NCBI RefSeq assembly: GCF_001194135.2
Contig: NC_069001.1
Coordinates: 3,243,176-3,279,885 of the forward strand
DNA: 36,710 nucleotides
DNA from: Octopus bimaculoides
Lineage: Eukaryota
Direction of reading: 5' to 3'
The position numbers were made by a program, and so were the translations under genes. Below are positions 7,000-36,710 of the stretch, piece after piece. The notes beneath the pieces are model-generated. The model did no database searches and was not told the origin of the DNA. It saw only the letters and a list, made by a program, of their open reading frames with translations. Position 1 is the first letter of the stretch, and the number at the start of each line of letters is the position of its first letter.

Positions 7000-9429
7000 C
7001 TATTGAGGAAGAAAATGATATTATCAGAATCAAGAAGCAAAGATTATTCATACAGTAATTCAACTGCTATCATGGCAAATATTTCATCACACCAAGGAGA
7101 AGCAGGAAAGTAACTTACATTTAATAAACTCCTCCACCTGTTGTTGAATTATTTTAATACATACAGGTAGACCTACCAACATCAAATAAAGACATCTAGC
7201 TATTTAATATACAAACACCTAAATTTGTATTTAATCAGAGACACACCTACATCTGTTGCTGAGTAACTTAATTCAGATACATCTACCATCCAACCATTGC
7301 AACATGGAAGGCGGACGTTAAAAGATGATGATATACACCTACTGCTCAATAATTTAACAGGGACACATACTTATTTAATATACAGACATACCTGTTCAAT
7401 TACACTGTGTAACAAAATTTTATTTATTCATTTTTGTTTTTGGCTTTTAAGTGTTGTTTCCTATTTGCTTCTATCAAGAAATCAAAGGAAATGACTACTC
7501 CTGCCCTCAAACTTTGCTTTTGTCACCTGGACATCAATGTTTTGAAACTGACCTATTTTCCATTACACTCCAGACAGATTCAGCGCTGAAGCAGAAATAT
7601 TGTTATAGCAAATATTCTGCTCAATACTACATATTTACTTGTCAGTTGCTTCACCGTAACCAACTGAGCATGTCCCTCAGTGGCCGACAGTATGTGCATC
7701 TTTGATCAAGAACAGGAGTAGAGGGGGAGGGGCATCATAGCCATGTGTTGAGAGGGATTCTTTGGGGTTTGAATAAATGCAACAAAAGCAAAGTTTGAAG
7801 GAAATATTAGCCATTTTTCATACTTTCTAGGGGTAAGCAAATAAGAAATAAGCAGTTGCTACCCAAGGGCAAAAATCACATTATACAGTGTTATATATGT
7901 GACTAGATTTATCATTGTCATCATTTTTGGTTTTGAAGATGACTTAAATTTCAGTAGAGACAAAACACACACAAATCCAAACAATTTATTTCGTAATTTT
8001 ATACTTTATAAATATTTATATGCAGGATTTGTATTCTTCTGTCCATATCAGAGAGGGCTAGCTAGAAATTTTAAGGGCTTACCTTGAGTCTTAGCAGGTG
8101 AAAGTGGCTCAGCTATGCTCCCATCTGAAGACTCATCTCCTAATTTTGACTCTGCACTGTCTGATAGTTGTGGAGTCTGACGCATCACCTTCAATAACCG
8201 AGACACAGTCGTTCCCTTCGAAGCGGGTATAAATTTGGAATTCTGAAACAAACAAAAATGAAGGAATGATATGTAAATGCTGAGCCAGAATAGGTTTGCT
8301 AAAATTTGCTTCTACAATAAAAAAACAACAACAACAAAATCCCCAAAGAGTCTGAAAAACTTAATGAAACACACATACCTTTTATACATTAAAAGCACTG
8401 CAAAGTCATTTTGAGAAAACAAAACAAAAAATAAAAGCATATATTTCAATTAATGAACAAATTTTTTTATTTTCTAAATCAGTTCATTTAAATGGAAGGT
8501 AAGAAGGGGGAGGGGATTAAATTGTCTGTACAGAAAATTGTAGACAGGAAAGTTTTAAAATTAAAATGCCATTATAATAGAAAATGAATATTCATGTTAA
8601 TCCTTTTGTCATTAAATTTCTCATGAATAGGCACCTTCATGTTTATGCTTTTTCCTTTTACTTGTTTGTTATTGGACTGCGACCATACTGGAGCACTGCC
8701 GTGAATAGCTATCATTTTATGCCCCAGTTTTTAAAATTTTGTTTCATTGGCAGAGGTTGGAAAGATTTTCTGAGGCAGTGGTTTACACCCAGCTGCCCCT
8801 TCCTTTAAGACTTTAGCTCTTATTTCTAGCAGGTAGGTGCTTGTTAAGCATCATTATGCTTCATGCAAATTTATAATTCATAGCTATTTAATGCTATTGC
8901 GTCTGCGATCCACCTATGTCTCTGCTGGTGATATCATCAATTTTAAAATTTATCCACAGATGATATGAACAGTAGTGACATCTGATTTTAAATCAAAGTG
9001 TTTGAATGTTTTGCTTATAAATTTTTATGCACCATGTGCTCTGTTTTTGGTGCATATGTGCATATGTGCATATGTGACCACAGGATGTCACAAAACGTAA
9101 GCAACAAAAAAATACGAAGTACGAGGACATGGAATATGAACTTTCTTTTTTTTGCGAACAATGAAAGAAACAAATGGAAAACAAACAACAAAAAGAACGA
9201 CACTTCATCAGTTGTCGGCTGTTTTACTAATCCGTATTTCAAGCATTTCACGACAAGATGCGCCTTCAATAAAAAGTTGCTCCTGCAAAGCAAATTAAAT
9301 AAAATTTGGGATTTTATGGAGGGTTAAAATTGGTGACAAAAACTGGTAAGCCTAAACAAGGGTGTGGTGGCAAATGTGAAGAAAGAAGCTTGGACAGGAG
9401 ACAGACAAGAATACGTTTTCCTTGTCCAA

Positions 9430-11916: not shown

Positions 11917-14900
11917 NNNNNNNNNNCATGGCTGTGTGGTAAGAAGCTTGCTTCTCAACTACATGGTTCCAGGTTCAGTCCCACTGCATGGCACCTTGAG
12001 CAAGTGTCTTCTACTACAGTCTCGGGCTGACCAAAGCCTTGTGAGCAGATTTGGTAGAAAGAAGCCTGTTGTGTATATATTAAGTATATATCTATGTGGG
12101 TGTGTGTCTTTGTGTCTGTGTTTGTCCCCCACCACCACTTAACAACCAGTGTTGGTGTATTCACATCCCTGTAACTTAGCGGTTCAGCAAAAGAGACCGG
12201 TAGAATAAGTGCTAGGCTTAAAAAAAGTCCTGGGGTTGATTTGTTCAATTGAAATTCTTCAAGGTAGTGACCCAACATGGCTGCAGTCAAATGACTGAAA
12301 CAAGATATATATATATATATATATCTGCCAAATTTAGATTGGAGCCTGGTGTTGCCATCCGGTTTCACCAGTCCTCAGTCAAATCGTCCAACCCATGCTA
12401 GCATGGAAAGCGGACGTTAAACGATGATGATGATGATGATGATGATGATAATATATATATTGCTCATCATGTGTATATGTATATAGACTGTAGCTGCAAC
12501 CCAAAGGGTCGACCTCAAACACTGAGTGTGCCTGTGAATTATACTAAAGGTACAAATGTTGTGTTTGTGGAATATTCAACCACATGCACTTGTAATTCTA
12601 ATATTTTGGAAGAGTCATTCTTCATAGAAAGAACGGAAGCAAATAAATGAAACTGTTTTCCGGTAACACGGAATAAATATAAGAGTTATATAAAAAAAAT
12701 GTTTCCATGAAACCTCAACAACAACAACAGCAACAGCAACAAATAAAGCAAGAAAAACAAAAAAAAAGGACCTTGTGGGGCTTTTGAGAAAAAAAAAATG
12801 GCTAAAAAAATTTCACCAATTTTTGGAAGAATCAAGCTGTTGACATGTGGAAAGCAAAGGTAATTCTTGTGAGCACTGTTTTAAGAAGAGAAATAAACAG
12901 AGCACAGTAAAGGTTTAGTAATTTTTACCATTATTACAATTTACAAAGAAACATTATTAACCCTTTTGTTACCACATTTCTGTTGCAATAAACTGCTTTT
13001 GTTTCAATTAATTTTGAAGTGCAGGGCTTAGTGGTTAGGGTGTTGAATTCATGATTGTAAGATTGTGGTTTCGATTCTTGGACTGGACAGTGTGTGTTCT
13101 TGAGCAAAACACTTCATTCCATGTTGTTCCAGTCCAGTCAGCTGATATAAATGAGTAATCCTGGGACAGGAAACCAGCCCTAGGGGTCTATAGAACTCTG
13201 GAAAGACCCAATTTTGAAAATAATGAAGTAGTTACTTAAATAACTCTGTTATTATTAAGCTGGGCTTTGTTTGAAGGAAGATTTTAATTTACATCCCTTT
13301 AAAACAGGAACTTAGTATCACTGAACTAGGGGCAATCTCAGGTGGGTTGGTAATTCTGTTGCAATAAACTATTTTTGCTTCAATTAATTTTGAAAATATT
13401 GAGGAATTTAGCAAAATAATTTTTTTTCATTTGATGTTTGGAACATAAACACAAGATTTTGATGGAAGGTTTTAATTTAGATCACTTTAAGCCTTTTCTT
13501 ACCATATTTCTGTGGAAATATGCTGCCTTCGCTTCAATTAATTTTGAAAATATTGAAGAATTTCATAAAATAACTTTGTCGTTATTGAGCTGGTGTTTGG
13601 AGCATAACATAATATGAAATTTGTGGAGTGTTTTTACTTTGGATCGTTTTAAAATGGGAAGTTTGTATCATTAAACAAAGGGTGGTTTCATGCAGGTTGG
13701 TAACAAAAGGGTTAAAAGACTGAAACCTTGCCCCACCAACAAATTCTAATAAATCACAAAGAAAAGAGAGAAAACATACACACACACAGACAGAGTAATA
13801 GAAATCACAAAATAACATGAGTAAGATTATGAGGCTAAAAGGAGAAAGCACATGAGATAAAAAGTGTAGAAATACAAAGTGAAAAAGCAACAATCAAATA
13901 AGTGTACAACAAAGATAAATATTCCAGAGGATGAAAGAGAAGTGAAATTTAATGCTTCAGGTGATACACTTTATCAAAGTGAAGATAAAGGAATAAGAGA
14001 GGCAAGATGTAAGAAAAAATATACAATACCGAATTTAAGATGTCTGTTTACATGGCAGGTCTGAGACAGTGTGCATATGTGTATATACATTTCTTTTTAT
14101 AAATTTTTCATCATTGGACTGTGCCCATGCAGGAGCACAGTCAAGGGTATAGTCAAATACATCAACTCCCGTACTTGTAAACTAGTACTTATTTATTTTA
14201 TCAATCATGGAAGAATGAAAGGAAAGCTCAACATGTTGAGATTTGAAATTGGAATTTAAGAGAATCATCATAGAATATCATTGAAAATATTTGTTTAATG
14301 TTCTACTTTTTCTATGACCACACACACAAATATCAAGAGAGAATTTTAGTACTTAATTCAGAGCATGCAAATGCAATCAACAACCTGAAGCAGGATACAT
14401 ATTGTAGTTATCTCTCATAAAAAAAATAAAAGATATATATATTAAAATCTCATTTGTTGTCTCCATTCATTTATATACACCTGAAGTCAGCTTTGCATTC
14501 ATGCAACAAATGCTACTGATGTATTCAAACACACATATTACGAAAAACTTTCCAGTGTGTATGTACATCTCTTTTTTGTATGCAGCTATTGTCCAATTCT
14601 CTGCTGTTGCCACATAGCTGAATCTTTTTGCCTTACTATTCTATCCATCTGCCTGCTCCTCATTGAAAGAACAGCTATTTCATTCTCTTTGGTTCTGTCA
14701 CTTTCTAGTTCTCTTTCTCACTCTCAATCCCTTTTTGTCACACATACTCCCTGCCTTTTTTTTTTTATCTTTCTTCTTAACCATACAGCCATGCCTGAGT
14801 TTATATTTATATATATATATATATATATATATCTGTGTGTATATGTGGATGTGTATTCTTCCTGTCCAAGTGAATATATAAAAGCTTGGACTGGAAGATG

Positions 14901-17900
14901 GAAATATCCTCATTAACCTTTGCAGGCTCTCCTAAACACCTGGGGAAAAAGGACTAAGCATACTGGTTAATGCAGGACCCAGAGGGTGGGGAATGGACAC
15001 AGTACAGGTGACAAGTGGCAGAGAGATAAGTAGTTTAGAAGTACTTGAGTAGCAATGACACAATATCAGCTAAATCCAAGGAACAAAATCCATTGGAGAT
15101 CTAAGTACTAAGTATTGAATCATCATCATAGTGGCTTTCCACTTGTTGCTGTCTATTATCATCTCTTTTACAAGGTTCAGCATCCTAAGATCAACCTGCA
15201 TCACTTCTCATGTTTCCCTGTTCTGCAGCCTCCTTCCACTTTGGGTCTCTTGACCCCTCTTCACCCAACTGCTATCCCTCGTTAATACCACATGTCTGTA
15301 TAAGTACAATTTTTTCTCTTGTTAACTACCGGCTCCCACAATTCCCCAGTCATTGCAGCACAGTGACATCAGTCTTCACATATCCCTCAGCATTCAATGT
15401 CCATAACTTGCTACCAGGCAACATCTTACTTTGCACGTAGCTGTGATATAATCTGCCCTTCACTCTCCATTAATACTGATTAGCTCCTCTAAATACCAGA
15501 AGTTCATCACCATCCTTGTTTAACGTCCACTTTCCATGCTGGCATGGGTTGGACAGTTTGACATGGCTTCTACAACTGGATACTCTTCCTAATGCCACCA
15601 GCATGGGTGCATCAACACAGCACCAGTGTGGGTGCTCTTTAAGTGGAATCAGTATGGGTGCTTTCTAAGTGGCACCGGCACTTTTTAAGTGGCACTGGCA
15701 CCTGTAAGATGTATGTGTGGAAGACGGTGATTTTACTTAGCTTGAAGTGTCTTTTCAAGTACAGCAAATTACCACATTCTTTAGATAACCAGGTGATACT
15801 TGTTGAAAGCTAGGGTGAACTGAAGTAATATAGAAGATAGAGCACTGTGTCATATCCATGAGAGATAAATGTCTCTTAGATATGACTCCAGTTTATCATA
15901 GGTAACATGTGAAGATAACTTGGTGGTACTTATTGTAAATTTCCAATAACTTTTGTTTAAGAAAAAAACTTCATAACTAATTTCTGAAAATATAGCTATT
16001 TGTTTTATTAACATTCTTTCTTTTTTTTTACAAATTTTTGTATAAATTTGAAATTGTTTAGAATAACAGAAAAGAAAAAACACAGGGTAAAAACAAAGTA
16101 AAAAACATAAATGCTGCAGTTTATGAAGAATAAAAGGAAAAAAAAATGATTGATATAAGTATTAAAGTCAGTTATTATTTGGGAATAAACACAAAAGAGA
16201 GAATACAGAAAATTTACAAAATGAAATGTATTTCAGTGAATTTGGGCAATCAGATCTTAGGGGGGAAATCCTTAATGCACCAAATTAGAACATAAATAGC
16301 TGCCTTCTTGATTATGGGAAACTCAGAGGTTTGTGTGGTCTGGATATCACACTGTAGAATTGCAGTAAGGGCTCTTGGGGGATAAAAAAAAAAAGGAATT
16401 CTTGTTGATGTCGCCAAGAGAAATCTCTCTCGTAACCTTGCAACAATGTGATATCACAGGCTTGCATATCAGACTTTGTATGGACGAGATATCACATAAC
16501 TTCTTGCAGATGGCATATCACCAAAGTCACATTCTTCCTCCTTCTCATCATTTTATGTCTGTTTTCCATGCTGGCATGGGTTGAACGGTCTGGCAGGACC
16601 TGGCAAGCTGCAGAGCTGCACCAGGCTCCAAACTGTCTGTTTTGGGATGGCTTTTACAGCTGGATGCCCTTCTTAAAATTCCGAAATTATTAACATGTCT
16701 AGCAAGCAGGTATCCAGTACTAATGACAGGTAAAGACCCAGAAACCATGGTCTACTGGTCTTGTCAATCTGGAGGGGGAGTGACTCACTCCCTTACAATA
16801 TATTGGACACAGGCTGTGTGTTGTTAACCAGCTGGAAAAGACGTTTTCCTGGGGTTAAAATGTAGTAACATAGTTCTGCATAGAACAGCCATGGTATAGT
16901 GGCAAAAAATATTATCTAAAATTATTATCATGTTATAATTATTATTATCAGAAAACTTTATACAATGAGAGATCACATACATCATACTAATAAGATGCCA
17001 TTAAGCTACTTACCATAGCCTTTGATAATACAAAATTTATTTTTCCAATACAGAACCATAAATTCAATAAATTGTCTATTTTCTTCATTTGCCTCAAGGG
17101 AAACAATGATATCAGTAAAAGTGACTTCTGACATAGGTACAAAACATATGTGGAAAGGAGGGGGGAACAGTTGATGAGATTACCCCCTCGACCACCACCA
17201 TCGAGCGTATGACTGATACTTTATTTTATCAAGCCTTGAGAATGGAATGAAATAAAAAAAAAACCCTCGGAGGGATTTGAACTGAGAATGTAGATAGATC
17301 GAACTCAATATTGCCAGACTTGATATTAGCAAAAGGTGAAGAACTTGCAATTATTTGGAATTATAGGTGATTGGACTGATTCCAATACATACCTGTCTTG
17401 AGGTCTATCTGACAGATCCCAATCATCTGCCAGAGAAAGATTCTATCTATGGGTAACGGTGAGGCTCCCTTATATGAAGTGAACTTTGAACTTAAAGAAA
17501 CAAAATTTCAATGCTATAAGGGACATACTCCAGTGTTTTAACCAGGGCTGTGGAGTCGGAGTCCGAAACAATTAAGGGGTAGCTGAAGTTGGAGTCAGAG
17601 TCGGTATACTTTTTACTGACTCTGACTCACAATGTCTTTACTCTTGAACATAAACCAGTTATAACATATAGGCTGACTCAAAGTACAAGACTATGCTTTA
17701 TGAGATATGTAGACCACAAACACTTAATTACATACACAGGAGTCAGAGTCGAAGTTTCTTGTTTCGACTCTTCAGCCCTGGTTTTAACAATGTAGTAAGG
17801 GACATTCAGTCTAGCACCTTAATAGGAAATATCAAACAAGTGTTATACCAAGACCTACAATGTAATGAACCATCCAGTAATACATCTGGGAGTAGAAATT

Positions 17901-20900
17901 TTCTTACCATATTCTTCAGCTGATTGCAATTCATATAAAACTGCTAGAATTGATTTTCCCTTAACAAATAAGGACTCATGATCATCACCATCATTTTATA
18001 TCTACTCAGAGTTTATTGAAGCAAATTTTCTACGACTGGATGCCCTTCCTGTTACCAACCCTCACCTGTTTCCAAGGAAGCTGATATCTCCCCCATGACC
18101 GGACATTTTCATAGAATATTGCCAACAAATGACATTCACTTACAACCGCCATGCAATGTCAAGTCAAAGAGACACAAGCACTGACACGCTCCCATTCACA
18201 CACACACATATATATATACACAACAGGCTTCTCTCAGTTTCCGTTATCAAATCCACTTACAAGGCTTTGGTCAACCTAAGGATATAATAACAGACACTTG
18301 CTCAAAGTGTCAGACGGTGAGATTGAAACTGAAACCATGGAGTTGGAAAGCAAACTTTTTAATCATGCAGGACAGATCATGAGCAGAGAAATAAGAAATA
18401 AGTATTAAGCATATTTCCTCATCTCAGAAATATAGAGTTATATTAAGAAATAAGTGTTTTAACTGACCTGTAGAATAAAATAAGATAATAAAGGGGAAAA
18501 ACATAAAATAGAACTGCTGCATGTATTTTACTTTTAGAAAGAAAATGGAATTATCAATGTTTTTTTTTTTGATTTTTTAAATATTAAAACAAAAAAAAAT
18601 GTTAAACATGTTAAAAGTTTCATTCAGTTTTCAATAATTTAAATATTCAAATTTGAAGTATCCTGCTTGTTTTCCCAGGATACTTCAAATGTTGAAGTGA
18701 TATTTCTGTATCAGAGATGAAAGCTCTTTGAATTTTGTATTCTTACAACACCAAAAAATCTTGCTCCTTGCATTCGCCTTTCGTCCTTAAAAAGCCAAAC
18801 AGCAGCGAATTGGCCACATTCCATCACGTATGCATCATCAGAAAAGGACACAGCTGACATTACAAGGTAGATGGAGGGGTAAAGCAAGCAGTCTTCCTCT
18901 AAGTGATGTGTCTAACTCACCTCAGACCGAACCGAGAACTTGTTGCTGCTGTAAGACAATGCTTCCATGTTGACTGAAGAAGCAGCTTCGCGAGAAACTT
19001 TGCGGCGTTTCTTTTTCTTCAGATCAATGTCTGTCAGTTCGGCATTTTCCGTTTGAGATACAGACTGCGACAAAACACTGCCAAGGAACTCGGATACCTC
19101 ATCCTGAAAATAAATAAGTTTTGTTATCTTTCCTTGTAATCCATTGTTTTTTATGGGTGAGGCTATGAATATGTATGGCTGGGGACAACTGCATAAAGAA
19201 GTGCCAAACCCTAATTGTGGAGGGTACTTGTGGAAGGGGTAGACCCAGGAAAATATGGGATGAATGGTGAGAAAGGATCTTCAGATGCCGAGCCTCTTTG
19301 AGAAAATGGCTGGTAGATACATAGGCAAAATTCAAACCATGTACCTGTTATTTGCTGAGGCAGGCAAAATCTGAGCAAGCTCAACAAGATGAAGCTAGCA
19401 GTATTGATGGTGGGGGAGGGGGAGAACTGGTTAATGATCTTATTATAAAGCAACAGTTTGAGATAGGAAGTGGCCGGTAGATACATAGGCAAAGCTCAAA
19501 CCATGTATTTGTTGTTTAAGTGGTCGGCATTACCACTTACCTCATATAACTGGGCCTCACTAAGGAAACGACAAGGGACCAGGAGATGTGGCAATTTGCT
19601 GTACTTGATAAGACACTTCAAGCTAAGTAAAATCACTGTCTTCCACACATACGGGTTTGTCCTTTCAGGTATCAGTACCACATAAAAAGTACCTGTGCCA
19701 GTGCTGCGTTAATGCACCTGTGCTGCATAAATTCACCCATGCTGGTGGTACATAAAAATCACCCAGCACACTCTGTTAAGTGGTCGGCATTAGGAAAGGC
19801 ATCCAGCCGTAGAGACCCTGCCACAACAGACAGTTGGAGTCTGGATAGCTCCCTGCCAGCCAACTCCATGTCAAACCATCCAACCCATGCCGGCATGGAG
19901 AGGGGATTTTAAACAATGATGATGATGCTAATGCTCTCAGGCCTGGGCCCCTAACTTTACCCTCCACCTGGGCTCCTGAGCTAAAAAAAAATAGTTGCAT
20001 ATACCAGCAAATTAATGCACAGAACTTGGCCTGGGGCTGAAGAAGGAGAGCAACATCAACAAGGAGGAGGAGGAAGACGAAGAGAAAAAGAAGCAACAGC
20101 AATCATCAGAGGAGCTTACTCACCAAAATGAACCTATCGACTGTGCATTGTGTGATTCCTTCTTGCTTCTTTTTGGCCCTTGAAACCCGTAAATTGTCAT
20201 CTGCTCCACCAATAACCACCAGACTGTTCTCAGCTTTCATCTTTTCTCGAAGATCTTCAATGCCATCAATATCACAAGAATTACTATGTTGACCGATTAC
20301 AAAGAGTGTTGATGTTTTGCTTTCTAAGAGTGGATCTTCAACATCCTGAAAAAAAAAACAGAGAAGACACGATCAACAATAATAATTTTTTTTCAAATTT
20401 TGACACAAAGCAACAATTTGAGGTAGGTGGGGGTGCAAGCCAGTTGCATCAACCTGGTGTTAAACTGGTACTTATTTTATCCGTCCCAAGATGAAACACA
20501 AAGTCGACCTCTGTGGTATTTGAACTCAGAACATAAAGTGGGGAGTTTCATCTACCCTGTAGTACCAGAAAAAAACGCCATTAAGCATTTAGTCCAATGC
20601 ACTAATGATTCTGCCAGCTCAATGGTTTCTAATTTTGGCAGAAGGCAATCCTAAGGGAGGTGGCCATTGATTACATTCACCCTAGTGTTCAACACGTATA
20701 TATTTTATCAACTCCAGAAAGATAAAAGGTAAAGTGACCACAATGGAATTTGAACCCATAACGTAAAGAGTTGGAAGAAATGCTGCAAAGCATTTTGTAT
20801 GGCAAGCTAACAACTGTACCAGCTCTCATAGGTTGCAGGAGGGAAAAGCATAAAAGGGGGGGGGGGCAAAATAACAGTCACATCCCTGTTCAGATCAATC

Positions 20901-23900
20901 ACTATGTTGAAAAGGAAGGACAGATAGGATAATGTCGTCTTAATTAGAATATGTTTGAAGTGTAAGATACAAGTTTAATGGATGGAGCAAATTGATTTAT
21001 AGGTCTGCCAGTTTAGATTTGACCTGGGGTTAAACAACTACATATATTATATACCATCATGGTCAATGTTTATATGTCTATCTTTCTACATCTGAATGGG
21101 TCAAATAAGAGCATGTTGGGCCAGAGTTTCTATGGCCAGATACCCTTCCTGTTGTCAACCGTGTCATATCAACAAGGCGTAACAATCTCCAAGTCTAGCA
21201 AAAAAAACAAAAAACAAACAAACAGCCTGAACATATTTTATGCAGAGATACAAAGATCATGCAACATGTCGAGAAGCCCTGACAAGCTTTCATGGAGGAC
21301 AAGAAGACTCAACAACAATCAGGAAGCTATCGTTTAGAATGGTTTCTTGATTGTGTTTTGTTGGTATGGCAAACAAAAAAAAAAGGAAAAGATAATTGTG
21401 AAGCAGTTATAAAACAAACAGATCAAAAGAAGATGAATAAATAAAGAAACAGCAGATACGAACACCACGACCACCATTGATTCCTGTGAGTGGGAAACCC
21501 AAACAAATCACAGCAGATACCATCTCCACCAATGAAACCTAGGGTTGAAAATGAAAGGGGACATGTTATTAATAAATTAGCTGAACTGTCAATTACAATA
21601 AACATCTTGTGGAATATATACACATAAACACACACACAAACACATATGTATATATACGTACTCATGTATACATTCATCTTGTTTATGTGTGTATAATTAC
21701 ACATATTCATGTGTATACATTTCTACATATATATCCATACATCTCATTTAATGTACACACTATAAAGATACAAGATCAGATTGGAGCCTGGTACAGTCTC
21801 CTGGCTTGCCAGTCCTCAGTCAAACCATCCAACCCATGCCAGCATGGAAAACGGAAGTTAAACGATAATGGTGACATCATTGAAATCTCAAAGCTGCAAG
21901 GTAATGTACGACTAATTCAAATCAATGAGATTAAACAAACATTACATCTGGCAGAGTTAATCCATAATCAAATGTAAGGACTAAACTTACATGACATGCC
22001 ACCAATGCTCCAATATTCCATCCCAGCAAGACAATGGGTCGGTTCTGGAAATGGCCTTTTAACTGCAACAGAAATGGAAATATATCATCAAGACATTTTA
22101 AGAAATAGAAATAAATACATTTTTTTTCATTAAAACATTAGAGAAATAAAAATAACAGCCAAACAATTAATTGCTTAACCAATAAATTGTTAATTTTTGT
22201 TTGGGAGTCTCAGTATTACTGGAATATAATTTATATTTCTTCGCACAAAGCAAAAAGCTGAATGAAAACTGCCCCTCTGTTGGTTACAATGATGAAGGCT
22301 CCAGCTGATTCGATCAATGGAACAGCCTGCTGATAGAAATTAATGTGCAAGTGGCTGAGCACTCCACAGACATGTGTGCCCTTACTGTATCAATAGTTCT
22401 CATGGAGATTCAGTGTGACACAGAATATGACAAGGCTGGGCATTCCACAGACATGCATACCCTTAATGTAGTTCTCAGGGAGATTCAATGTAACACAGAA
22501 TGTCCCTTTGAATTATAGGTACAACTCATTTTGGCTACATGAGTGAACTGGGGCAATGTGAAATAAAGTGGCTTGCTCAAGGACACAAAGTGTCACCAGG
22601 AATTGAACCCATGACCTTACGATCATGAGGTGAATACCCTAACTACTAAGCGACATGCCTTCACACTGAATGAAAACTATAAATATAGGTGCAGGCATGG
22701 CTGTGTGGTTAAGAAGCTTGCTTTGCAACCACTTGGTTTCAGGTTCAGTCCCACTACGCGGAATCTTAGGAAGAAAGTGTTTTCCACTATAGTGGAAAAG
22801 ATATGATTGGACAGTTAAAAACAATACTTAGTGTGGTGTATATCTAAAAAAAATTTAATACATGAGAAGGGAGTTAATCAAGAGGAGATAGTGTATAAAG
22901 AGCTACTTGATAGTTAATGTAAACGAGTAATAGAGAAGTAAAAAGGGTTAAAGAGGGAATAAGATGCGTAAGATGGACTTAGGTTTGCAGAAGAACTAAT
23001 ATTTGTTAGTATGTATTAAATATAAGGTAGAAAAGTAAGTAAAAACAGACAAACATAGTTGTTAATATTACAATTTAGATAGTAAATACTTGCTGTGGCT
23101 ATAAAGATGAAAAAAGTGAAGTTTAAGAAGAAAATGGATGTTGGAATACAGAAAAAATAAAAATAATGGAGGGGAGACAAATGAGCTGGGAATGAAAAAG
23201 GCCAGTCAGGCGGTACTGGTAACAGCCACGCTCTCATAGTGGTTGGCGTTAGGAAGGGCATCCAGTTGTAGAAACACTACCAGATCAGACTGGAGCCTAG
23301 TGCAGCTTCCTGGCTTCCCAGACCCCAGTTGAACTGTTGAACCTATGCCAGCATGGAAAATGGACGTTAAACGATGATGAGATGAGATAACTAAGCAAAA
23401 ACAAATAAAAAATGCAGCTTACCTCTAAAACTTTGGTACGTACAGCTCCAATCATATGTTCAAGGCACTGGGCTATACCAACGCCACTGCCGCCATTTAC
23501 TGTATGCATTGTTACAGGAATCACTTTGCCAAGATTGGAGAGTTGAGTAATACAGAATTTCGTGCGTTTTGAATAATTATTATTGGGATAAGTGGGTCCA
23601 CTAGGAGCGACAAGAATTAATGGATTTCCAGGAAGCTTGCGCTGTCAGAACACAAAAATAAGGCATAGCGTTAGTTTATTTAGGAAACAGTATATTCTAT
23701 CAAATGTGTAACTGTCCAAGATGGTTAATTGCTAATCTAATTAATTATAAACTTATCTTTAGAGATAACATTTTTAATATTTACATTTAGGTATTTATAG
23801 ACCTAAATATTTAAAAACATTGCTACATCGTTAAAAGAAAATTAAATATAGTATATCATTTACATAATGAGATAATTCATTTCAAATTTTGGAACTCAAA

Positions 23901-25107: not shown

Positions 25108-28100
25108 AGCAGACTCTCTCTCTCAACAACAGCAACAGTAATAATAATAATTGACATGATCTGTTAACTTATGTTTTATATAATGCTTCAGCAATGTTTC
25201 TGCTGGTGAATCAATATTGAAACAATTGTAGCGTTATGTAATAAAGTGTGTTGCTCAATACATTTTCTACTATTCACATTTTTGCATAAACCCTTCAGAT
25301 ATCACAGAATTGCAGAAGTATAATCCAATGATATTTTGATCTCACCGTACGATAACATTTGTTAGCTGATACCTGTAGAGAAGCTTTGTCAAGCAAACTG
25401 CACGATTTTATACCCATATTGAATTTACATACATATATGTATGTGTGTGTGAGTGTGTGTGTGTGTATGTGTGTACGCATTTGTCCCCAACCACCACTTG
25501 AAAACTAGTGTCAGTGTGTTTCATCCCTAATGTCTAACAGTTCAGCAAAAGAGACTGATGGAATAAGTACCAATCTTAAAAATTCAGTACTGGTGTTGAT
25601 TCATTTGACTAAAAATTGAAAGTGGTGCCCCAGCATGGCCACAATCTAATTACTGAAACTTGATAAAAGATATACTCACCCATATTTCGCTAGCCAAGGC
25701 TTGTCGTATCCGTTTGGAAGATTTATCAACATGAATTCTTCGCATGACAGCTTCATTATTACTCTAGAAAGAAAAAAAAAGAAAAGAAAAGTAGTATATG
25801 TTTGCAGAATGCAGTCAAGATATATATATATAAATATAACTAAATATGTCAAGCTTAACCTACTCACACACCTCCATATGCATAATGTGTGAAAAGCACT
25901 GGTGCTGGTACCAGGTAAAAAGCACCCAGTACACTCTGTAGTGTCGTTGGCATTAGGAAGAGCAGTCCAGCTGTAGAAACCATGTCAAAGTAGACTATGG
26001 AACCTGGTGCAACTCCCGACCTTACCAACTCCTGCCAAACCATTCAGTCCATGCCAGCATGGAAAACGGATGTATGATGATGATGTGAATGTATGTAGAT
26101 ATGATATAAACATGTATAAGGAGGCTGTTAAGATATCAATATAAAACAGCAACAAAACAAATTAACATTGGTTCAACAGCCATCAGCTGTCTCACCATAA
26201 CATAGGTCTAGTCAAATGCAGACCTGACAACAGCTATTTGTGAAGGCACACAAATATTTGGTCAGGGTGATTCTAAGGTCATGGGTTCAATCCCTAGACC
26301 AAATGGTGTGCTGTGTCCTTGAGCAAGATACTTGATTTCACATTGCTCCAATTTATCCAGCTGTAAATGGCTACTAGCCAGTTGCTGTTGCAGTCCTCTA
26401 TCTGTCTCTCTCTTTCTCTCTTCTGCTGCCATATTCTGGATGTTCCACAAACTCAAGGGTCAGAGAGCAGAAAAGGTGTTTCTGCTTGCAATTACATCAA
26501 CAACTAAAAACAATTAATGAAAATATGGTACAATAATGTTACCAAGCCATTCTGGCCCACAAGTGATGGCTGGCCACACTGTACTGTGCTGTAGTTTAGG
26601 GTTACTTAACAACAACAACAGTTACTGTATCACCATCATTATAAGGAGAAAAATAGTTTTAAAAAAGAGCAACTCACTCCATCAAATGCTAGCCTGGCCA
26701 ATCGGTCGACATGAAGGGCTTTCATAACTTTGTTGTAAAGTCTCTTCTGCTGCATAGTCCACCCTGTTCTGTAACAGAAGGAAGGTATTTACTGAATAGA
26801 GAAGTCTGATTAACGGAAGAGGATGATGAACAGATCACACGTTCTATTCAAGATGAAGTTCTTTATCTAAACATTATGGTCAAGACCATATTGGAGCAGC
26901 ACCAGTTTGCTGAGCACATATAGGTGGCACAAGAGGCCAGGCACGGCAAGTCTACCAGCACCGTTCCCAGCCACCAAATCTCATCACAATGTATTGGTCA
27001 GACACCTGTCCAATGTGCCATGCAATGGGATCAATTCCAGAACCACCTGGTTGCATAGCTAACTTCTCAACTACACACGACAGGATGGTCATGGTTGGAA
27101 AGCCTATGACCATAGGTCTGTCCTATCAAGTTTAAACCAGAGCTAAGCAATGTCTGCATTTCCTAATAATAATCATGTTAGAAATACAAATAGGGAAAAA
27201 GAAAACTGGTAGCTTACTTGCTTATGTGTTCCTCAGAATCTTCCCCACCTTTATCTGGGTAAGCAAGGCTGACATGTCTTTCACATTCATTCATCAAGCT
27301 TCGGGCCTTGGCCACATCACCAATGTGTGAAGATTTAACAGTTGTGGTTTCAACATCGAGTATTTGGTCTTCATCACTAGAGAGAGAGAGATAGAATAAG
27401 AGAAAGAGATCTACAGGCTATACACAGAAGAATTACAGTAGAGAGGTGCATAAACAAGACATTAAGGCAACCATCATCAGAGAAGTGTAGAAAACAAGAG
27501 GTGATGAAGAGTGTCCAACCACATAAGAGAGAAGAGTTGAGGGTAGAACTGATCCAACATGCCCATACCTTTTGGTAATGTATTGTGCTTTTTGGCACAG
27601 CTTTTGAACTGTACGATGATATCTTTTACTAGTTTCAGTCATTAGATTGCAACCCATGCTGGGGCACCACCTTGAAGAATTTTAGTTGAATGAATCAACC
27701 CTAGTACTTATTTTTAAGCCTGGTATTTATTCTATCAGTTTCTTAAACCAAACTGCTAAGTTATGGGGATGCAAACAAACCAACACCAGTCATCACACAT
27801 TATATATATATATAATGGGCTTCTTTCAGTTTCCATCTACCAAATCCATGCACAAGGATTTGGCCGGCTTGAGGCTATAGCAGAAGACACTTACCCAAGT
27901 TTGCATGGACGTGGACGGGATGATATTTGATTAGAGGCATTGTTTTGCAGCTGCTTGACTGTCTTAGAATTAACCCCTCAACCAAGAAGTGGAGTTTCAA
28001 AATTTATAACTCAAGGAAAACTGGAGCAATCAGTGACATACACTACTTAAAGGCACAACACAATGGCTACAATATGAATAAAAAAGCATTAGATTTGAGA

Positions 28101-29345: not shown

Positions 29346-29529
29346 NNNNNNNNNNNNNNNNNNNNNNNNNNNNNNNNNNNNNNNNNNNNNNNNNNNNNNN
29401 NNNNNNNNNNNNNNNNNNNNNNNNNNNNNNNNNNNNNNNNNNNNNNNNNNNNNNNNNNNNNNNNNNNNNNNNNNNNNNNNNNNNNNNNNNNNNNNNNNNN
29501 NNNNNNNNNNNNNNNNNNNNNNNNNNNNN

Positions 29530-31313: not shown

Positions 31314-31404
31314 TGGTCGGGTGAGGGGGAATTTCAAAGTATGGTGGTTGCTGGAGTAAAGAAATTCATTTGGCTTTGAATACTGCAGGGATTTAGGAGG
31401 GAGA

Positions 31405-31590
31405 TGGAGGTGAGAGAGAGGGTAGGCAGACAGACACACACACGCAGGGAAAGAGAGAGAGAGAGAGATGGAGAAAGAGATAGGACAGACGGAGAGAAAG
31501 AGAAGGGGCAGGAGAGAGAAACAGAGAGGGGAGTGAGAGAGGAAAATAGACAGAGAAAGAGAGAGAGAAAGAAAGAAAGAGAAGGAAGGG
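31405..31590. repeat. GA-rich purine tract (pyrimidine tract on the minus strand, likely in or near the KANSL3 5' UTR)
   Basis: Runs of GAGA/GAAA/GACA immediately upstream of candidate exon 1. Confidence 0.75.
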
Positions 31591-31599
31591 CTAGTCAAT

Positions 31600-31770
31600 A
31601 GACTAACGGGATAGAACGGGTGGGGAAAACGTAGCGGGGGTAAGAAAATAAAACATTTAACCTTGAGTGTTATGAATAGGCTTTCAGTTAGTAAGTTATG
31701 AAAAGCCGAATTTTGTAGTTACGACATTGTGACAAATTCGACGAGACAGTCGGGGAAATGGTTTACATCA
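31600..31770. promoter_or_regulatory. Putative CpG-rich divergent promoter between KANSL3 and an unidentified plus-strand first exon
   Basis: CpGs are visibly more frequent from ~28950 to ~32110 than in the gene-body introns. The minus-strand start is at 31313; the plus strand has GAAATGG...ATCA|GTGAGT at 31758-31776. Confidence 0.45.
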
Positions 31771-31869
31771 GTGAGTATTTTCCTCTTAATTCTACAGTTT
31801 TGCCGATAGATTCTTGTATTTCCTTACGATTGTTATTGGCGATGATAATGTTGTAAATTAGTCTCTGCA

Positions 31870-32073
31870 TTTTGTTACTATGTTTCCGTTGAAATTATAT
31901 TTTTGGATTCGATTAAATTTTAAAATAATGAATTTAATAAAATAACTGTCATTCTTAATTAATTTGTTACACAAATTAACATGAAATTTTGGATAGAAGG
32001 TTTTCTATTTCGTTCGTTTTAAAACTGGAAGTTTGTATCGTTGAATCAGAAGCGGTTCCAGGCAGATTGATAA
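31870..32073 (+). mobile_element. Diverged second copy of the 12961-13711 MITE unit
   Basis: Colinear similarity: TTTGTTAC..TTTCCGTTG..TTAAATTTTAAAATAATGAA..TTTTAAAACTGGAAGTTTGTATCGTT..GATTGATAA. Confidence 0.65.
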
Positions 32074-32220: not shown

Positions 32221-32692
32221 TCATTTCATCATCATCATCGTTTAATGTCTGCTTTCCATGTTGACATGGGTTGGACGGTTTCACTGAGGACTGGCGAGCC
32301 AGAAGGCTGCACCAGGCTCCAATCTGATCTGGCAAAGTTTCTGCAGCTGGATGCCCTTCCTAACGCCAACCACTCCGAGAGTGTAGTGGGTGCTTTTACG
32401 TGCCACCGGCACGAAGGCCAGTAAGGCAGTACNNNNNNNNNNCCAACCACTCCGAGAGTGTAGTGGGTGCTTTTACGTGCCACCGGCACGAAGGCCAGTA
32501 AGGCAGTACTGGCAATGGCCATGCTCAAAATGGTTTATTTTACGTGCCACCTGCACAGGAGCCAGTCCAGCGGCACTGACAACGATCTTGCTCTCATGTC
32601 TTTACACGTGCCACCGGCACAAGTCCCAGGAAGGCGACGATATCATCATCATCATCGTTTAACATCCGCTTTCCATGCTAGCATGGGTTGGA
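32221..32692 (-). mobile_element. SINE family D copies spanning an N-gap (other copies near 15505-15720, 16540-16680, 17985-18130, 19680-19927, 21770-21880, 23195-23380, 25900-26085)
   Basis: CATCATCATCGTTTAA..TCCGCTTTCCATG...GGGTTGGAC...GGATGCCCTTCCTAACGCCAACCAC signature. Confidence 0.75.
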
Positions 32693-32713
32693 CACATATA
32701 TATATATTTCAAT

Positions 32714-32785
32714 GGCCAGATAACTGAAGAGATGGCAGCATGGGTTTCCGCCCTGGCATCCGAAACTCAGAGTTTTATCATGGCT
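32714..32785 (+). ncRNA. Type I hammerhead ribozyme (Penelope-like/retrozyme type, palindromic stem III)
   Basis: CUGAAGA core 32724-32730; stem II 32731-32761 (7 of 8 pairs); GAAA 32762-32765; stem III ACUC-A-GAGU; cleavage triplet GUU ending 32774; stem I GGCCA-GAUAA pairs with UUAUC-A-UGGCU. Confidence 0.75.
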
Positions 32786-33643
32786 ACCGAATAATTGTCA
32801 CATATTATTTACAGATATATATATATATATATTTCTGTTTATGAAATTTGCTTACAAAGCATTGGTTAACCCAAAGCTTTAGTAGAAAACACTAGTCTAA
32901 GGTGTCACACTGTGGAACTGAACACCAAACCACAAGGTTACAAAGTGGGCTTTGATGAGAGATTTAGGAATATACATTTCACAAAAGATTTTAAGGATAT
33001 GTATTTAAACTGGGCATATGTAGCCGAAATATTCTACTTGATTTATGTTCAAACAAACCCTATCTCACCTCTTACACCTACCTTACAATGTCACTCTAAG
33101 ATCAAACAACCACATCATCGAAATCTATGAGATAATGCATTGCCTTTGACAGAGTTATCTGAATGTAAAAGAGTTAAGAATAGATTTAAGCTGCTCTTTT
33201 CCTTACGTTGAGTAAGTTACATTGTTGTTCCCATGTTTATTTGCTATGGTATTGTCTCAGAAGAAGAAGGAACTAAAAACATATGCCCACATTTAAGACT
33301 TAGGCTGAAAAGAAATTTCTGAAGAAATTCCACTTCAGTTCAGTGAGATCCCTCCATTGCTTGAATTGTTTACATTGAATTAACGAGTTGCAAAAAACTG
33401 GTTTGACATATGAATGTTAATTTTCTTTAAAAGGCCCCCCCCCACACACACACACACATAAATATATATATATATATACATATGTANNNNNNNNNNGGGT
33501 ACAGGACGTTAGAACAATGAACTACAGACAACGGAACGAACACATAGGAAAACGGAAAGCCACTTGGAATATTCCTTCATCAGCTGTTTCATATATATAT
33601 ACGTATAAATATACTGTATACACACACACAGGCTCCAGTCTGA

Positions 33644-33778
33644 AACACCAGGCTCCAGTCTGAAACTCTGCCAAATCAGACTGGAGCCTGGTGTTGCCAT
33701 CCGGTTTCACCAGTCCTCAGTCAAATCGTCCAACCCATGCTAGCATGGAAAGCGGACGTTAAACGATGATGATGATGA
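33644..33778 (+). mobile_element. Young 5'-truncated family D SINE with an inverted duplication at its 5' end
   Basis: About 97 nt identical to 12340-12436; 20-bp perfect inverted repeat 33644-33663 / 33676-33695; (GAT)n tail. Confidence 0.75.
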
Positions 33779-36259
33779 CACACTGGCACATATGAAGTAA
33801 TAAAAACGGAAATAATGCCAGCCCCAAAATTGCTCATTGGGGAAGTAATATGGAGAAAAGAAGCCTATTGTTTAAGGCTGCTTCTTTCAGTCGTTACAAC
33901 CAAAAACTGAAAAATGTTGGCCTAAATTGCAAGAAAAGGAAATAAAAAATATATTCATGTTTATGTTAAGAAATAGAAGAGAAAAAAGGGATTGCTTTTG
34001 TCAAGCGATGGTGGGGGGACAAACAAGGACACACACACACAATCTTTTTTCATTGACCCCTTGAGACAGTTGGTACCTCTCACTTGAAATGTTTGTTTCA
34101 CATACTAGTATTAAGGGAGAACCCCACCCCCACCCCCACCATCTCTTTTCCTTCACCTCTGTTCCTTTATTCTTTAATCACTTGCTACAGTTAATAACCA
34201 CATGAGTTCATGTAGGAGTCTCTATGTGGTTGTTTGCTGTATTAGAAGTAATAGCCAAATCTCTAATTCAGTTCTTTTAAATAAAGGAACAACACTTTGG
34301 ATAATGTAGCCCTTGACAAGGTTGGAGTGGTTATGATTGGAATGCCTTTTATTATAGGTCAGTTAAATCAAGTTGACCTGGTGCTCACAAGACTTTGTCT
34401 ATCACAACGTACAGTTCATGTGGCAGTGTGCCACATGTTTTCAGTTTGAAAATAACTTCTTTCTGCCAATCCCAGAGAACCTGAAATGGGTCATAGCTGT
34501 TGTTTCCCCTCCTATTACCAAATCATGAGAACATGTAAAAAAAAATTTTAAAAAAAGAAGAAGCTATAATCTAAAGTGTTACCCACATGTCTGAGACCCC
34601 TCTGCTGGTGGCATCTTCTCCTCTGCATCCTCTCTACCCCATCCCTCCTCCCCACTCCCTTGTTGTTCCACACCTGAATGAAGGTCATTCAATTGAGCAA
34701 CCAATACTCTTTTAAACCACAAGGACAGAGACATGTGGGTTATACTAATTTTTGCCTCATCTTTATTTTTCTTCGTTCTGTTGCAGTTTGTAATTTATAG
34801 CATAGTTGTTAACAGGTGTTCAATTCCCCAAATGAAATTTACAATGACAAACAAACAAGTGAGCAAGCATGACAAAGAAATACCTGTGCTTTTGTCACTT
34901 GACAGGTCATGCAAGAAATATTGTCTTTTTGTGGTGGGTGGGCACGATTCTGCATTGCATTTAAATGAAAGAAGACATTGTGTGATTGCTGTAGTAAAAA
35001 CAGCCAGTTTGCATCTAGGCTGAAAAGTAATCTTTGCCATCTCATTAATAACCAAGGGTCATAATGTGTGTGTGTGTATATGCATATGTATGTGTGTCTA
35101 TGTATATATATATATATATATATATACATACACACACACACACACACGCACACATTTTATATATATAATTATATGCATTTATATAGAAGCATTGATCATA
35201 GAACAAACATCAAATTCGAGTACACTCTCTAAAGTGTTGACATTAGGAAGGGTACCGGGCCGTAGAAACCATGCCAAAGCAGACACAGGAGCTCGTTTGT
35301 TTATTTTAGAATTATAATTTCCATTGTATAAAACGTAGAAATGTAAAGACATCCCCCCCCCCCCAGTAAAGACATTAAAAAGAAAATTATGAGTTGTTGG
35401 GCACGCCCGCGCGCGCGTGTACGTGCCTGTTCCCCCACCTCATTCCTAAATTTTGTGAGTATATGTGTATGTGTGTGTGTGTAAGTATACAGATTTGCAT
35501 ACACGTGTACAAGGGAATGTTGGCGAAGAAAACAAATATCAATAGTAAATCAAAACAAATCCATGATGGTGGTGGTGGTGGTGATTGTGACACCGAAGGA
35601 AGTAATGTTGCGGTTAGCGTTGCTGATAATGATGTCGACAATTATAACGCTGGCGGGAGTATATAGCGGGTGCTGTTGATAATGCTACTGGTATTTTATG
35701 TTGCTAATGATATTGATGATGATGATGTGTGTTCTTATATTTGTGTTGACAATGATGATAGTGGTGATTGTGTTGGTGTTAGTGTTGACAGTAATATTAA
35801 GTAAATGGGGAAATGATTCCACCTCTGAATCATGTAAAATAATACTTGAATAAAAAATAATACTAATAATAAAACCAAAATCCCAGTAAATAACTTTCGT
35901 GTAACGCTGCCTGACGGAAATAACGGAAAGTAACGGATATTTACGAAAACAAATCATCGTTTTTGTTGATATTTCGACTTGTCATGTAAACCTTGTCTTG
36001 TTTCTTTTACTAAATTCCTTCGGTATTTCGCTCTTATTTCTAAAACTCGTCAGAGTTTTTAAGCAACGCTTACAAATGCAAGGTAATTATTTAATTATAT
36101 TCATTCATTGACTGACTGACACTCAAGATTTGTGTTTCATTTTATCTTCGGATCTGATATTAACTTATCTTTCACGACTCAAGTGCGTATGACCATGCAT
36201 ATAATCATGTATACATACATACATACATACATATGCATGTATGCTTGTATGTATGTATA

Positions 36260-36603: not shown

Positions 36604-36710
36604 CCTTTCGAACAAAACACGAAAAAACACATACATAACTGTTATTAGGTCCTTAGGACATCGTCCTAATAACAGTTATGTATGTGTTTTTTCGTGTTTT
36701 GTTCGAAAGG
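36604..36710. repeat. Perfect 46-bp inverted repeat reaching the window end
   Basis: 36604-36649 is the exact reverse complement of 36665-36710. Confidence 0.9.

What the first reader, a model, noticed from the sequence alone, without database searches (positions are those of the whole stretch)
32714..32785. Near-complete type I hammerhead ribozyme with a palindromic, dimer-type stem III
Seen: every catalytic-core element is present in the right order: CUGAAGA (32724-32730), hairpin II, GAAA (32762-32765), stem III, and a GUU cleavage triplet (cut predicted 3' of 32774). A 10-bp stem I with one bulged A closes it (GGCCA-GAUAA with UUAUC-A-UGGCU). Stem III is AACUC-A-GAGUU, a palindrome too short-looped to fold well alone. 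Defects: a G-G mismatch in stem II and one unpaired C at its base, as if GGAUGCCAG had mutated to GAUGGCAG. Known: minimal type I hammerheads with palindromic stem III mark Penelope-like elements and retrozymes and can cleave as dimers. Inference: this is an isolated ~110-bp remnant between microsatellites, about 1 kb downstream of the putative divergent promoter. It would be in sense within the first intron of the candidate plus-strand gene, so it could cut a nascent transcript.
Basis: partly seen in the sequence, partly recalled or inferred. Interest (0 to 1): 0.82.

Follow-up and report, generated by a model that had tools for sequence, protein, structure and literature searches.

The report
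Isolated hammerhead-ribozyme-like motif in octopus DNA
A single 72-base stretch about 4.4 kb upstream of the octopus KANSL3 gene carries every conserved letter and all three helices of a type I hammerhead (self-cutting) RNA, which is far more than chance gives in one window. It misses the curated Rfam threshold and I could reach no relatives, so it is most likely a stranded, probably feeble relic of a retrotransposon-borne ribozyme.

Summary
At 32713-32786 (+) there is a 5' stem I strand, CUGAAGA, a 31-nt irregular hairpin II closed by G10.1-C11.1, GAA, then A-CUC-A-GAG-U, U17, and a 3' stem I strand.

- **Chance:** A generic hammerhead descriptor with constrained folding gives -16.0 kcal/mol. 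The next best core in the window is +5.8. Comparable matches arose in 1 of 6000 shuffled windows and with 0 of 539 scrambled-core decoys on the real sequence.
- **Rfam:** At genome scale about 10-25 chance matches are expected.
- **Fold:** The hammerhead fold lies about 9 kcal/mol above a rod-like alternative. Helix III is unstable alone.
- **Copies:** There is no second copy in the window, so no partner for a dimer.
- **Context:** The window is Octopus bimaculoides. The only recognisable gene is KANSL3 on the minus strand. I found no evidence for the proposed plus-strand gene or intron.
- **Relatives:** No octopus relatives or orthologues were reachable, so conservation is untested.

Best reading (about 0.5): a solitary relic of a Penelope-like or retrozyme hammerhead inserted in (AT)n. 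Chance is about 0.35. Interest is low to moderate.

The parts
32713..32723 (+). Helix I, 5' strand (U-GGCCAGAUAA; positions 2.x to 2.1)
   Evidence: It pairs with 32775-32786, giving 11 bp with A32780 bulged. Duplex energy is -11.2 kcal/mol.
32724..32730 (+). Core strand C3 U4 G5 A6 A7 G8 A9 (CUGAAGA)
   Evidence: Read directly from the sequence. It aligns to the CUGAnGA of Rfam RF00163.
32731..32761 (+). Helix II: a 31-nt irregular hairpin closed by G10.1-C11.1, with C32760 unpaired and a G32735/G32756 mismatch
   Evidence: Constrained fold. The hairpin alone folds at -11.3 kcal/mol. The Rfam model skips it as a 29-nt insert where the model expects 12.
32762..32764 (+). Core G12 A13 A14
32765..32773 (+). 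Helix III, ACUC-A-GAGU (A15.1 to U16.1), a near-palindrome with a central A
   Evidence: As a monomer it is 3 bp plus a CAG triloop at +2.1 kcal/mol. The self-duplex of GAAACUCAGAGUUU is -11.8 kcal/mol.
32774..32774 (+). U17. The predicted scissile bond lies between 32774 and 32775 (GUU triplet).
   Evidence: Position in the alignment to RF00163. GUU is listed among the active NUH sites (PMC3138052).
32775..32786 (+). Helix I, 3' strand (UUAUC-A-UGGCU-A)
32787..32814 (+). 28-nt unique 3' flank between the motif and the downstream (AT)n. It could be the 3' end of the inserted element.
   Evidence: There is no other copy in the window. Its role is inferred only.
32696..32707 (.). Upstream (AT)6 run bounding the roughly 107-bp unique segment
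32815..32832 (.). Downstream (AT)9 run bounding the unique segment

Best explanation
This is a solitary hammerhead motif of the metazoan type I kind. It is most likely what remains of a short, 5'-truncated copy of a hammerhead-carrying retroelement that inserted into an (AT)n tract, about 4.4 kb upstream of KANSL3 in Octopus bimaculoides. The source element would be a Penelope-like element (PLE) pseudo-LTR (pLTR) or its non-autonomous derivative, a non-LTR retrozyme.

If transcribed on the plus strand, the RNA could in principle fold into helices I, II and III around the CUGAAGA/GAA core and cleave after U32774.

As it stands it is probably a poor or dead ribozyme, for five reasons:
- Helix III cannot stand alone.
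- No partner copy is nearby for a double hammerhead.
- Helix II has a bulge directly next to G10.1-C11.1, plus a G-G mismatch.
- The triplet is GUU rather than GUC.
- A rod-like hairpin that hides part of the core is much more stable.

Shown here: the motif, its statistical rarity, its sub-threshold match to Rfam, and its single-copy state in the window. Inferred: its retroelement origin and its weak or absent activity.
For: **The motif is complete and rare.**
- The core is complete and in the right order, with G10.1-C11.1 and C15.2-G16.2 as in natural hammerheads.
- The hammerhead-constrained energy is -16.0, against +5.8 for the next best core in the window.
- That energy was reached in 1 of 3000, 0 of 2000 and 0 of 1000 shuffles, and by 0 of 539 scrambled-core decoys on the real sequence.
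- Rfam Hammerhead_1 aligns over model positions 1-45 of 45 in this register. The Rfam consensus helix III is itself a loop-less palindrome (ACGC.GCGU), which is the dimer type.

**Published properties of hammerhead-bearing retroelements fit.**
- PLE hammerheads have a long helix II (6-8 bp), bulges in helix II, a small palindromic helix III, and low activity unless dimeric (PMC4209133).
- PLE endonucleases cut AT-rich DNA, and Naiad PLEs prefer (TA)n (PMC11167929; PMC8557442).
- In the anole PLE, reverse transcription starts about 85-92 nt downstream of the hammerhead cut site. A heavily 5'-truncated copy would therefore be a hammerhead followed by a short 3' piece, as seen here.

**Real hammerheads are common in such genomes.** There are about 5000 in a mussel and 235 Rfam-grade ones in the giant squid. 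That density is well above the chance rate measured here.
Against: - Rfam scores it at 13.3 bits against a gathering score of 34. Rescaled to one family over the whole window, E is about 0.1.
- At about 1 in 3000 to 1 in 6000 per 36.7-kb window, a genome of roughly 2.7 Gb (size from my own knowledge) should hold some 10-25 chance matches this good.
- No second copy exists in the window.
- No reverse transcriptase or GIY-YIG remnant lies in the 2 kb downstream.
- No homologue was found in any collection I could reach. Those collections do not hold octopus genomes, so this negative has little power.
- Helix I is 11 bp, whereas PLE hammerheads have 2-5 bp.
- The unpaired base of helix II is on the 3' strand (11.2 side). 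PLE hammerheads have it between A9 and G10.1.
- The hammerhead fold has an ensemble probability of about 1e-7 in the nearest-neighbour model.
Confidence: 0.5

Rival explanations
1. It is a chance resemblance. An ordinary imperfect hairpin in repeat-rich intergenic DNA happens to carry CUGANGA and GAAA in the right places. It never was a ribozyme.
For: - The Rfam score is far below threshold (13.3 against 34 bits).
- The most stable fold is a plain rod (-25.3 kcal/mol) with an unremarkable z-score of -1.9. The minus strand folds about as well, at z -2.1.
- Helix II needs both a bulge and a mismatch.
- GUU is an uncommon triplet in natural hammerheads (my own knowledge).
- It is single-copy in the window.
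- At genome scale 10-25 matches of this quality are expected by chance (scaled).
- The bare core pair CUGANGA...GAAA occurs 8 times in the window.
Against: - Per window the match is a 1-in-3000 to 1-in-6000 event.
- It stands 8 kcal/mol clear of all 539 scrambled-core decoys on the real sequence.
- Positions the descriptor did not demand also agree with natural hammerheads: G10.1-C11.1, C15.2-G16.2 and a palindromic helix III.
- The density of real hammerheads in mollusc and cephalopod genomes exceeds the chance rate.
Confidence: 0.35
2. It is a working, host-retained single-copy ribozyme. It cleaves a plus-strand transcript, either an intron of a neighbouring gene or a promoter-upstream transcript divergent from KANSL3.
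For: - The core is intact and helix I is long at 11 bp, which would help a lone motif fold.
- Isolated intronic type I hammerheads exist in amniotes (my own knowledge of HH9 and HH10). The retrozyme paper notes isolated, non-tandem motifs in mammals.
Against: - No plus-strand exon or gene is detectable in the window.
- Helix III is unstable alone, at +2.1 kcal/mol.
- The competing rod is about 9 kcal/mol better.
- No conservation data are available.
- In vertebrates, non-LTR retrozymes are reported to be excluded from introns and exons (bioRxiv 10.64898/2026.07.22.740005).
Confidence: 0.05
3. It is a hairpin element of another kind that only mimics a hammerhead: a microRNA-like precursor, an RNA-editing substrate, or a small inverted-repeat transposon.
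For: - Both strands fold into a roughly 72-nt rod.
- Inverted repeats are common in this window, for example 36620-36695.
Against: - The fold z-scores are only about -2.
- The upper stem is riddled with internal loops.
- No Rfam microRNA or other family matches here.
- There is no second copy and there are no terminal repeats abutting a TA duplication.
- This reading does not explain the exact core.
Confidence: 0.05

Closest known systems
Canonical metazoan type I hammerhead (Rfam RF00163 Hammerhead_1; newt satellite, Schistosoma and non-LTR retrozyme hammerheads)
   Same: - Helix I is open.
- The CUGANGA and GAAA cores are present, with G10.1-C11.1 and C15.2-G16.2.
- Helix III is short and palindromic, which implies action as a dimer.
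- The Rfam model aligns end to end.
   Different: - It scores 13.3 bits against a threshold of 34.
- Helix II is a 31-nt irregular hairpin instead of about 4 bp plus a loop.
- No loop 1 / loop 2 contacts are recognisable.
- The triplet is GUU, not GUC.
- It does not sit in a 150-450 bp tandem repeat.
Penelope-like-element hammerheads (min-HHR and the Drosophila virilis variant; Cervera and de la Pena 2014, PMC4209133)
   Same: - Helix II is long and irregular, with a bulged base.
- Helix III is small and palindromic.
- Low activity is expected unless dimeric.
- The AT-rich / (TA)n insertion context is typical of PLEs.
   Different: - Helix I is 11 bp rather than 2-5 bp.
- The unpaired base is on the 3' strand of helix II, not between A9 and G10.1.
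- No pLTR, reverse transcriptase or GIY-YIG sequence is nearby.
- No family of copies has been shown.
Isolated intronic hammerheads of amniotes (Rfam HH9 and HH10; my own knowledge)
   Same: It is a single, non-tandem type I motif in or near a gene.
   Different: - Those have stable helices, are conserved across species, and pass their Rfam models.
- This one matches neither HH9 nor HH10 at E up to 10.
- No conservation could be tested here.

Membership tests
Hammerhead ribozyme, type I | Conserved core: C3 U4 G5 A6 N7 G8 A9, G12 A13 A14, A15.1-U16.1, and H17 not G | tested here: met
   CUGAAGA at 32724-30, GAA at 32762-64, A32765-U32773 and U32774.
Hammerhead ribozyme, type I | Three helices around the core, with helix I open and helices II and III closed | tested here: met
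   The constrained fold scores -16.0 kcal/mol: helix I has 11 bp with one bulge, helix II has 10 bp with a bulge, a mismatch and an internal loop, and helix III has 3 bp plus a triloop. This is rare in shuffles and decoys.
Hammerhead ribozyme, type I | G10.1-C11.1 closing pair of helix II | tested here: met
   G32731-C32761 is present, but the next base on the 3' strand (C32760) is unpaired.
Hammerhead ribozyme, type I | Reaches the curated Rfam gathering score (RF00163, 34 bits) | tested here: not met
   There is no hit in the whole-window gathering scan or in the 301-nt scan at E up to 10. It scores 13.3 bits, E = 1, when only 85 nt are searched.
Hammerhead ribozyme, type I | Tertiary contacts between loop 1 (or a helix I bulge) and loop 2 | tested here: inconclusive
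   Helix I has a bulged A after 5 bp, and helix II has a G-G mismatch at a similar height. No known contact motif is recognisable, and there are no homologues to test it.
Hammerhead ribozyme, type I | The hammerhead fold is thermodynamically accessible | tested here: not met
   The rod-like minimum-energy fold is -25.3 kcal/mol against -16.0 for the hammerhead fold. The ensemble share is about 1e-7. Caveat: nearest-neighbour models ignore core tertiary energy, and dimer-type hammerheads are often hidden in rods.
Hammerhead ribozyme, type I | Mg-dependent self-cleavage 3' of position 17 | not testable with these tools
   This needs in vitro transcription of a monomer and a tandem dimer.
Hammerhead ribozyme, type I | Family of related copies or orthologues with a conserved core and covarying helices | not testable with these tools
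   No octopus genome is held in the searchable collections. ORF look-ups, a protein search and DNA pattern scans were all empty.
Penelope-like-element hammerhead | Lies in the pLTR of an element that encodes a reverse transcriptase (and usually GIY-YIG) | tested here: not met
   There is no Pfam match in any plus frame of 32786-34800 and none in the neighbouring ORFs. Upstream is a SINE end and (AT)n. A 5'-truncated copy would lack the ORF, so this does not exclude a PLE origin.
Penelope-like-element hammerhead | Long helix II (6-8 bp) and a small palindromic helix III | tested here: met
   The criteria come from PMC4209133.
Penelope-like-element hammerhead | Short helix I (2-5 bp) and an unpaired nucleotide between A9 and G10.1 | tested here: not met
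   Helix I is 11 bp. G32731 follows A9 directly, and the unpaired base is C32760 on the other strand.
Penelope-like-element hammerhead | Insertion in AT-rich or (TA)n DNA | tested here: met
   (AT)6 at 32696-32707 and (AT)9 at 32815-32832 flank the 107-bp unique segment. This is circumstantial, because (AT)n is very common in this window.
Non-LTR retrozyme | Tandem repeats of 150-450 bp, each carrying a type I hammerhead | tested here: not met
   There is no second copy by BLAST, by Tandem Repeats Finder, or by a covariance model of the motif run with filters off (next best 16.5 bits, no core).
Non-LTR retrozyme | Expressed as small linear and circular RNAs | not testable with these tools
   No expression data are available.

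The most novel reading that the evidence does not exclude
A single-copy hammerhead has been kept by the host just upstream of the KANSL3 promoter region in octopus. It cleaves plus-strand (divergent or neighbouring-gene) transcripts co-transcriptionally, using its unusually long helix I to fold without a partner. That would make it a cephalopod counterpart of the conserved intronic hammerheads of amniotes.
Probability: 0.04. Interest if true: 0.65.

Novelty: new member of a known kind. Interest (0 to 1): 0.27.

Why it matters
Hammerheads are already known by the thousand in animal genomes, mostly as passengers of Penelope-like elements and retrozymes. One more degenerate copy changes little.

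It would matter in two cases. First, the octopus genome could turn out to hold a family with this long helix I and long helix II architecture that Rfam misses. That would add a cephalopod hammerhead variant and a marker for PLE or retrozyme history. Second, this copy could prove conserved and active beside KANSL3, which would be a rare case of a domesticated invertebrate ribozyme.

The case also shows that a motif can be highly significant within one window yet sit below curated covariance-model thresholds. Only copy-number and covariation data can settle such cases.

Tried and rejected
- **Diverged SINE body.** I asked whether the motif is a diverged piece of the neighbouring SINE, read antisense. 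Local alignments of both strands to nine SINE copies gave z of 2.4 or less, so I rejected this. The shared 10-mer AGCATGGGTT (32680-89 and 32737-46) is the only similarity.
- **tRNA-like SINE head.** ARAGORN found nothing in the window.
- **Other Rfam families on either strand.** Only noise appeared.
- **Orthologous locus.** The KANSL3 protein of the window is not on record in the contig index. The closest genomic relative (L001, 45% identity in the last exon) ends 5 kb from that exon and is not an octopus-grade match. The next relative (L002) is a transcript. No other octopus KANSL3 gene turned up.
- **Other copies by way of short ORFs across the motif.** Exact look-ups and a protein search of the frame translation were both empty.
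- **DNA pattern scans.** Two complementary patterns against JGI metagenomes and one against viral contigs returned nothing. This was expected, because those sets hold no cephalopod genomes.
- **Papers and supplements.** Octopus PLE consensus sequences and the SINE sequence were not held.
- **KANSL3 transcription start.** I tried to place it with the related transcript's 5' UTR, but nothing aligned.
- **Double-hammerhead energy.** The trans dimer of a type I motif is pseudoknotted in a two-strand representation, so I report only the helix III self-duplex energy.

Full report
**What is there.** The plus strand of 32713-32786 reads U-GGCCAGAUAA / CUGAAGA / GAUGGCAGCAUGGGUUUCCGCCCUGGCAUCC / GAA / ACUCAGAGU / U / UUAUCAUGGCUA. 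In hammerhead numbering this is:
- the 5' strand of helix I;
- C3-A9;
- a 31-nt helix II hairpin closed by G10.1-C11.1;
- G12-A14;
- helix III from A15.1 to U16.1;
- U17;
- the 3' strand of helix I.

Helix I has 11 pairs with A32780 bulged. Helix II has one G-C pair, an unpaired C32760, three pairs, a G-G mismatch, three pairs, a 2x2 loop, three pairs and a tetraloop. Helix III cannot have a 1-nt loop. Alone it is 3 bp plus a CAG triloop, at +2.1 kcal/mol.

**Is it more than chance?** I wrote a generic type I descriptor. It requires:
- CUGANGA;
- 6-45 nt;
- GAAA;
- a 5-25 nt segment running from A15.1 to a U;
- then a base that is not G.

The core was forced unpaired, the three junction pairs were forced, and there were 12-nt flanks on each side. 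Every match was folded under those constraints.
- On the real window, both strands, the candidate scores -16.0 kcal/mol. The next best core scores +5.8.
- An energy of -16 or lower appeared in 1 of 3000 dinucleotide shuffles of the window.
- It appeared in 0 of 2000 shuffles done in 500-bp blocks, and in 0 of 1000 nulls of the local 43% GC composition.
- As a control that keeps the real sequence, I replaced the core by all 539 other permutations of its letters. None scored better than -8.0.

For one window the match is therefore roughly a 1-in-3000 to 1-in-6000 event. Scaled to a genome of about 2.7 Gb (size from my own knowledge), some 10-25 such matches would still arise by chance.

**Curated models.**
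- The Rfam gathering scan of the whole window found nothing.
- A permissive scan of 301 nt listed no hammerhead.
It scored 13.3 bits against a gathering score of 34, with E = 1 for that search.
- Rescaled to one family over the whole window, E is about 0.1 (my arithmetic).
- The model skips helix II as an insert and scores only six pairs of helix I. The extra pairing that makes my statistic so extreme is therefore not counted by it.
- The Rfam consensus helix III is itself a loop-less palindrome, which is the dimer type.

**Folding.**
- The free minimum-energy fold of the 75-mer is a rod at -25.3 kcal/mol. It pairs G8-A9-G10.1 with the CUC of helix III and extends helix I into C3-U4.
- The hammerhead class has an ensemble share of about 1e-7.
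- The fold z-scores are ordinary: -1.9 on the plus strand and -2.1 on the minus strand.
- Nearest-neighbour models ignore the tertiary energy of the core. Hammerheads of viroids and retrozymes are often hidden in rods, so this does not argue against ancestry. It does argue against efficient cleavage by the lone motif.
- The helix III segment pairs with itself at -11.8 kcal/mol, so a double hammerhead is conceivable.
- No partner exists. BLAST, Tandem Repeats Finder and a covariance model of the motif with filters off all find no second copy in the window. The next best covariance-model match scores 16.5 bits and is an unrelated palindrome.

**Context.**
- The window is Octopus bimaculoides. 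The large minus-strand ORF at 5375-7063 is 100% identical to the UniRef KANSL3 protein of that species.
- KANSL3 exons map from 28306 down to 5378 on the minus strand. The motif lies 4.4 kb upstream of the KANSL3 start codon, on the other strand.
- Directly to the left, at 32642-32693, is the 3' end of a SINE-like repeat in minus orientation. The window holds at least 11 copies of that repeat. The motif shows no significant similarity to its body.
- The motif sits in a 107-bp unique segment between (AT)6 and (AT)9.
Plus-strand ORFs between 31980 and 36709 have no significant Pfam match, and all three plus frames of 32786-34800 have none.
- The 5' UTR of a related species' KANSL3 transcript could not be placed.

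**What it most likely is.** Published work gives a coherent, though untested, origin.
- Hammerheads of Penelope-like elements have a long, often bulged helix II, a small palindromic helix III, and poor activity unless dimeric (PMC4209133).
- PLE endonucleases cut AT-rich DNA, and some clades prefer (TA)n.
- In the anole element, reverse transcription starts 111-118 nt into the ORF, and the hammerhead cuts 26 nt into it. A heavily 5'-truncated copy is therefore a hammerhead plus a short 3' piece. Here 40 nt separate the cut site from the downstream (AT)n.
- Real hammerheads are dense in comparable genomes: about 5000 in a mussel and 235 Rfam-grade ones in the giant squid. That exceeds the chance rate I measured.
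- Three things count against membership of the PLE type. Helix I is 11 bp instead of 2-5. The unpaired base of helix II is on the wrong strand. No reverse transcriptase or GIY-YIG remnant is nearby.
- The retrozyme definition, which requires tandem units, is not met.

I therefore file it as hammerhead-like and probably hammerhead-derived. I do not call it a demonstrated member of either retroelement family.

**What could not be done.** No octopus genome is held in the searchable collections.
- Look-ups of ORFs across the motif were empty.
- A protein search of the frame translation found nothing.
- Two metagenome pattern scans and one viral pattern scan found nothing.
- Attempts to fetch the orthologous KANSL3 locus failed.

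Copy number, orthology and covariation are the decisive evidence, and they remain open.

| Reading | Probability |
|---|---|
| Relic of a retroelement hammerhead | about 0.5 |
| Chance resemblance | about 0.35 |
| Host-retained active ribozyme | about 0.05 |
| Other hairpin element | about 0.05 |

If real, it is a new member of a known kind. Interest is low to moderate.

Noticed in passing
window 12386-12437(+), 33728-33778(+), 32642-32693(-), 32223-32276(-), 15504-15555(-), 19879-19930(+), 21828-21874(+), 23340-23388(+), 26049-26085(+), 16545-16586(-), 7289-7332(+): At least 11 copies of one SINE-like repeat. Its 3' end reads GTCCAACCCATGCYAGCATGGAAAGCGGACGTTAAACGATGATGATG, with a (GAT)n tail. 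Several copies are 5'-truncated directly against (AT)n runs.
   Followed up: partly
window 5378-28306, minus strand: The KANSL3 gene of Octopus bimaculoides. Twelve coding blocks map here, the first at 28306-28187 and the large last exon at 6871-5378.
   Followed up: yes
window 32366-32432 and 32443-32509: An exact 67-bp duplication on both sides of a 10-N gap (32433-32442). This is almost certainly an assembly artefact inside a SINE copy. Other N gaps are at 11917-26, 29346-29529, 30487-96 and 33487-96.
   Followed up: partly
window 36620-36695: A near-perfect inverted repeat with arms of about 33 bp (CGAAAAAACACATACATAACTGTTATTAGG...). It folds at -43.4 kcal/mol. It could be a palindromic transposon end or a hairpin RNA gene.
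   Followed up: no
window 36026-36053, minus strand: A second CUGACGAG...CGAAA core pair with the typical G and C neighbours but no usable helices (hammerhead-constrained energy +5.8). The window has 8 bare core pairs against 2.45 expected from shuffles.
   Followed up: partly
window 33624-33666: A 20-bp unit, ACACACAGGCTCCAGTCTGAA, repeated twice just 5' of the SINE copy that ends at 33778. The unit is the reverse complement of part of the SINE body (CAGACTGGAGCCTG).
   Followed up: no
window 31512-31583 and 31400-32000: A GA-rich low-complexity tract next to a patch with raised CpG observed/expected (up to 1.5), about 1 kb left of the motif. No transcript evidence could be attached to it.
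   Followed up: partly
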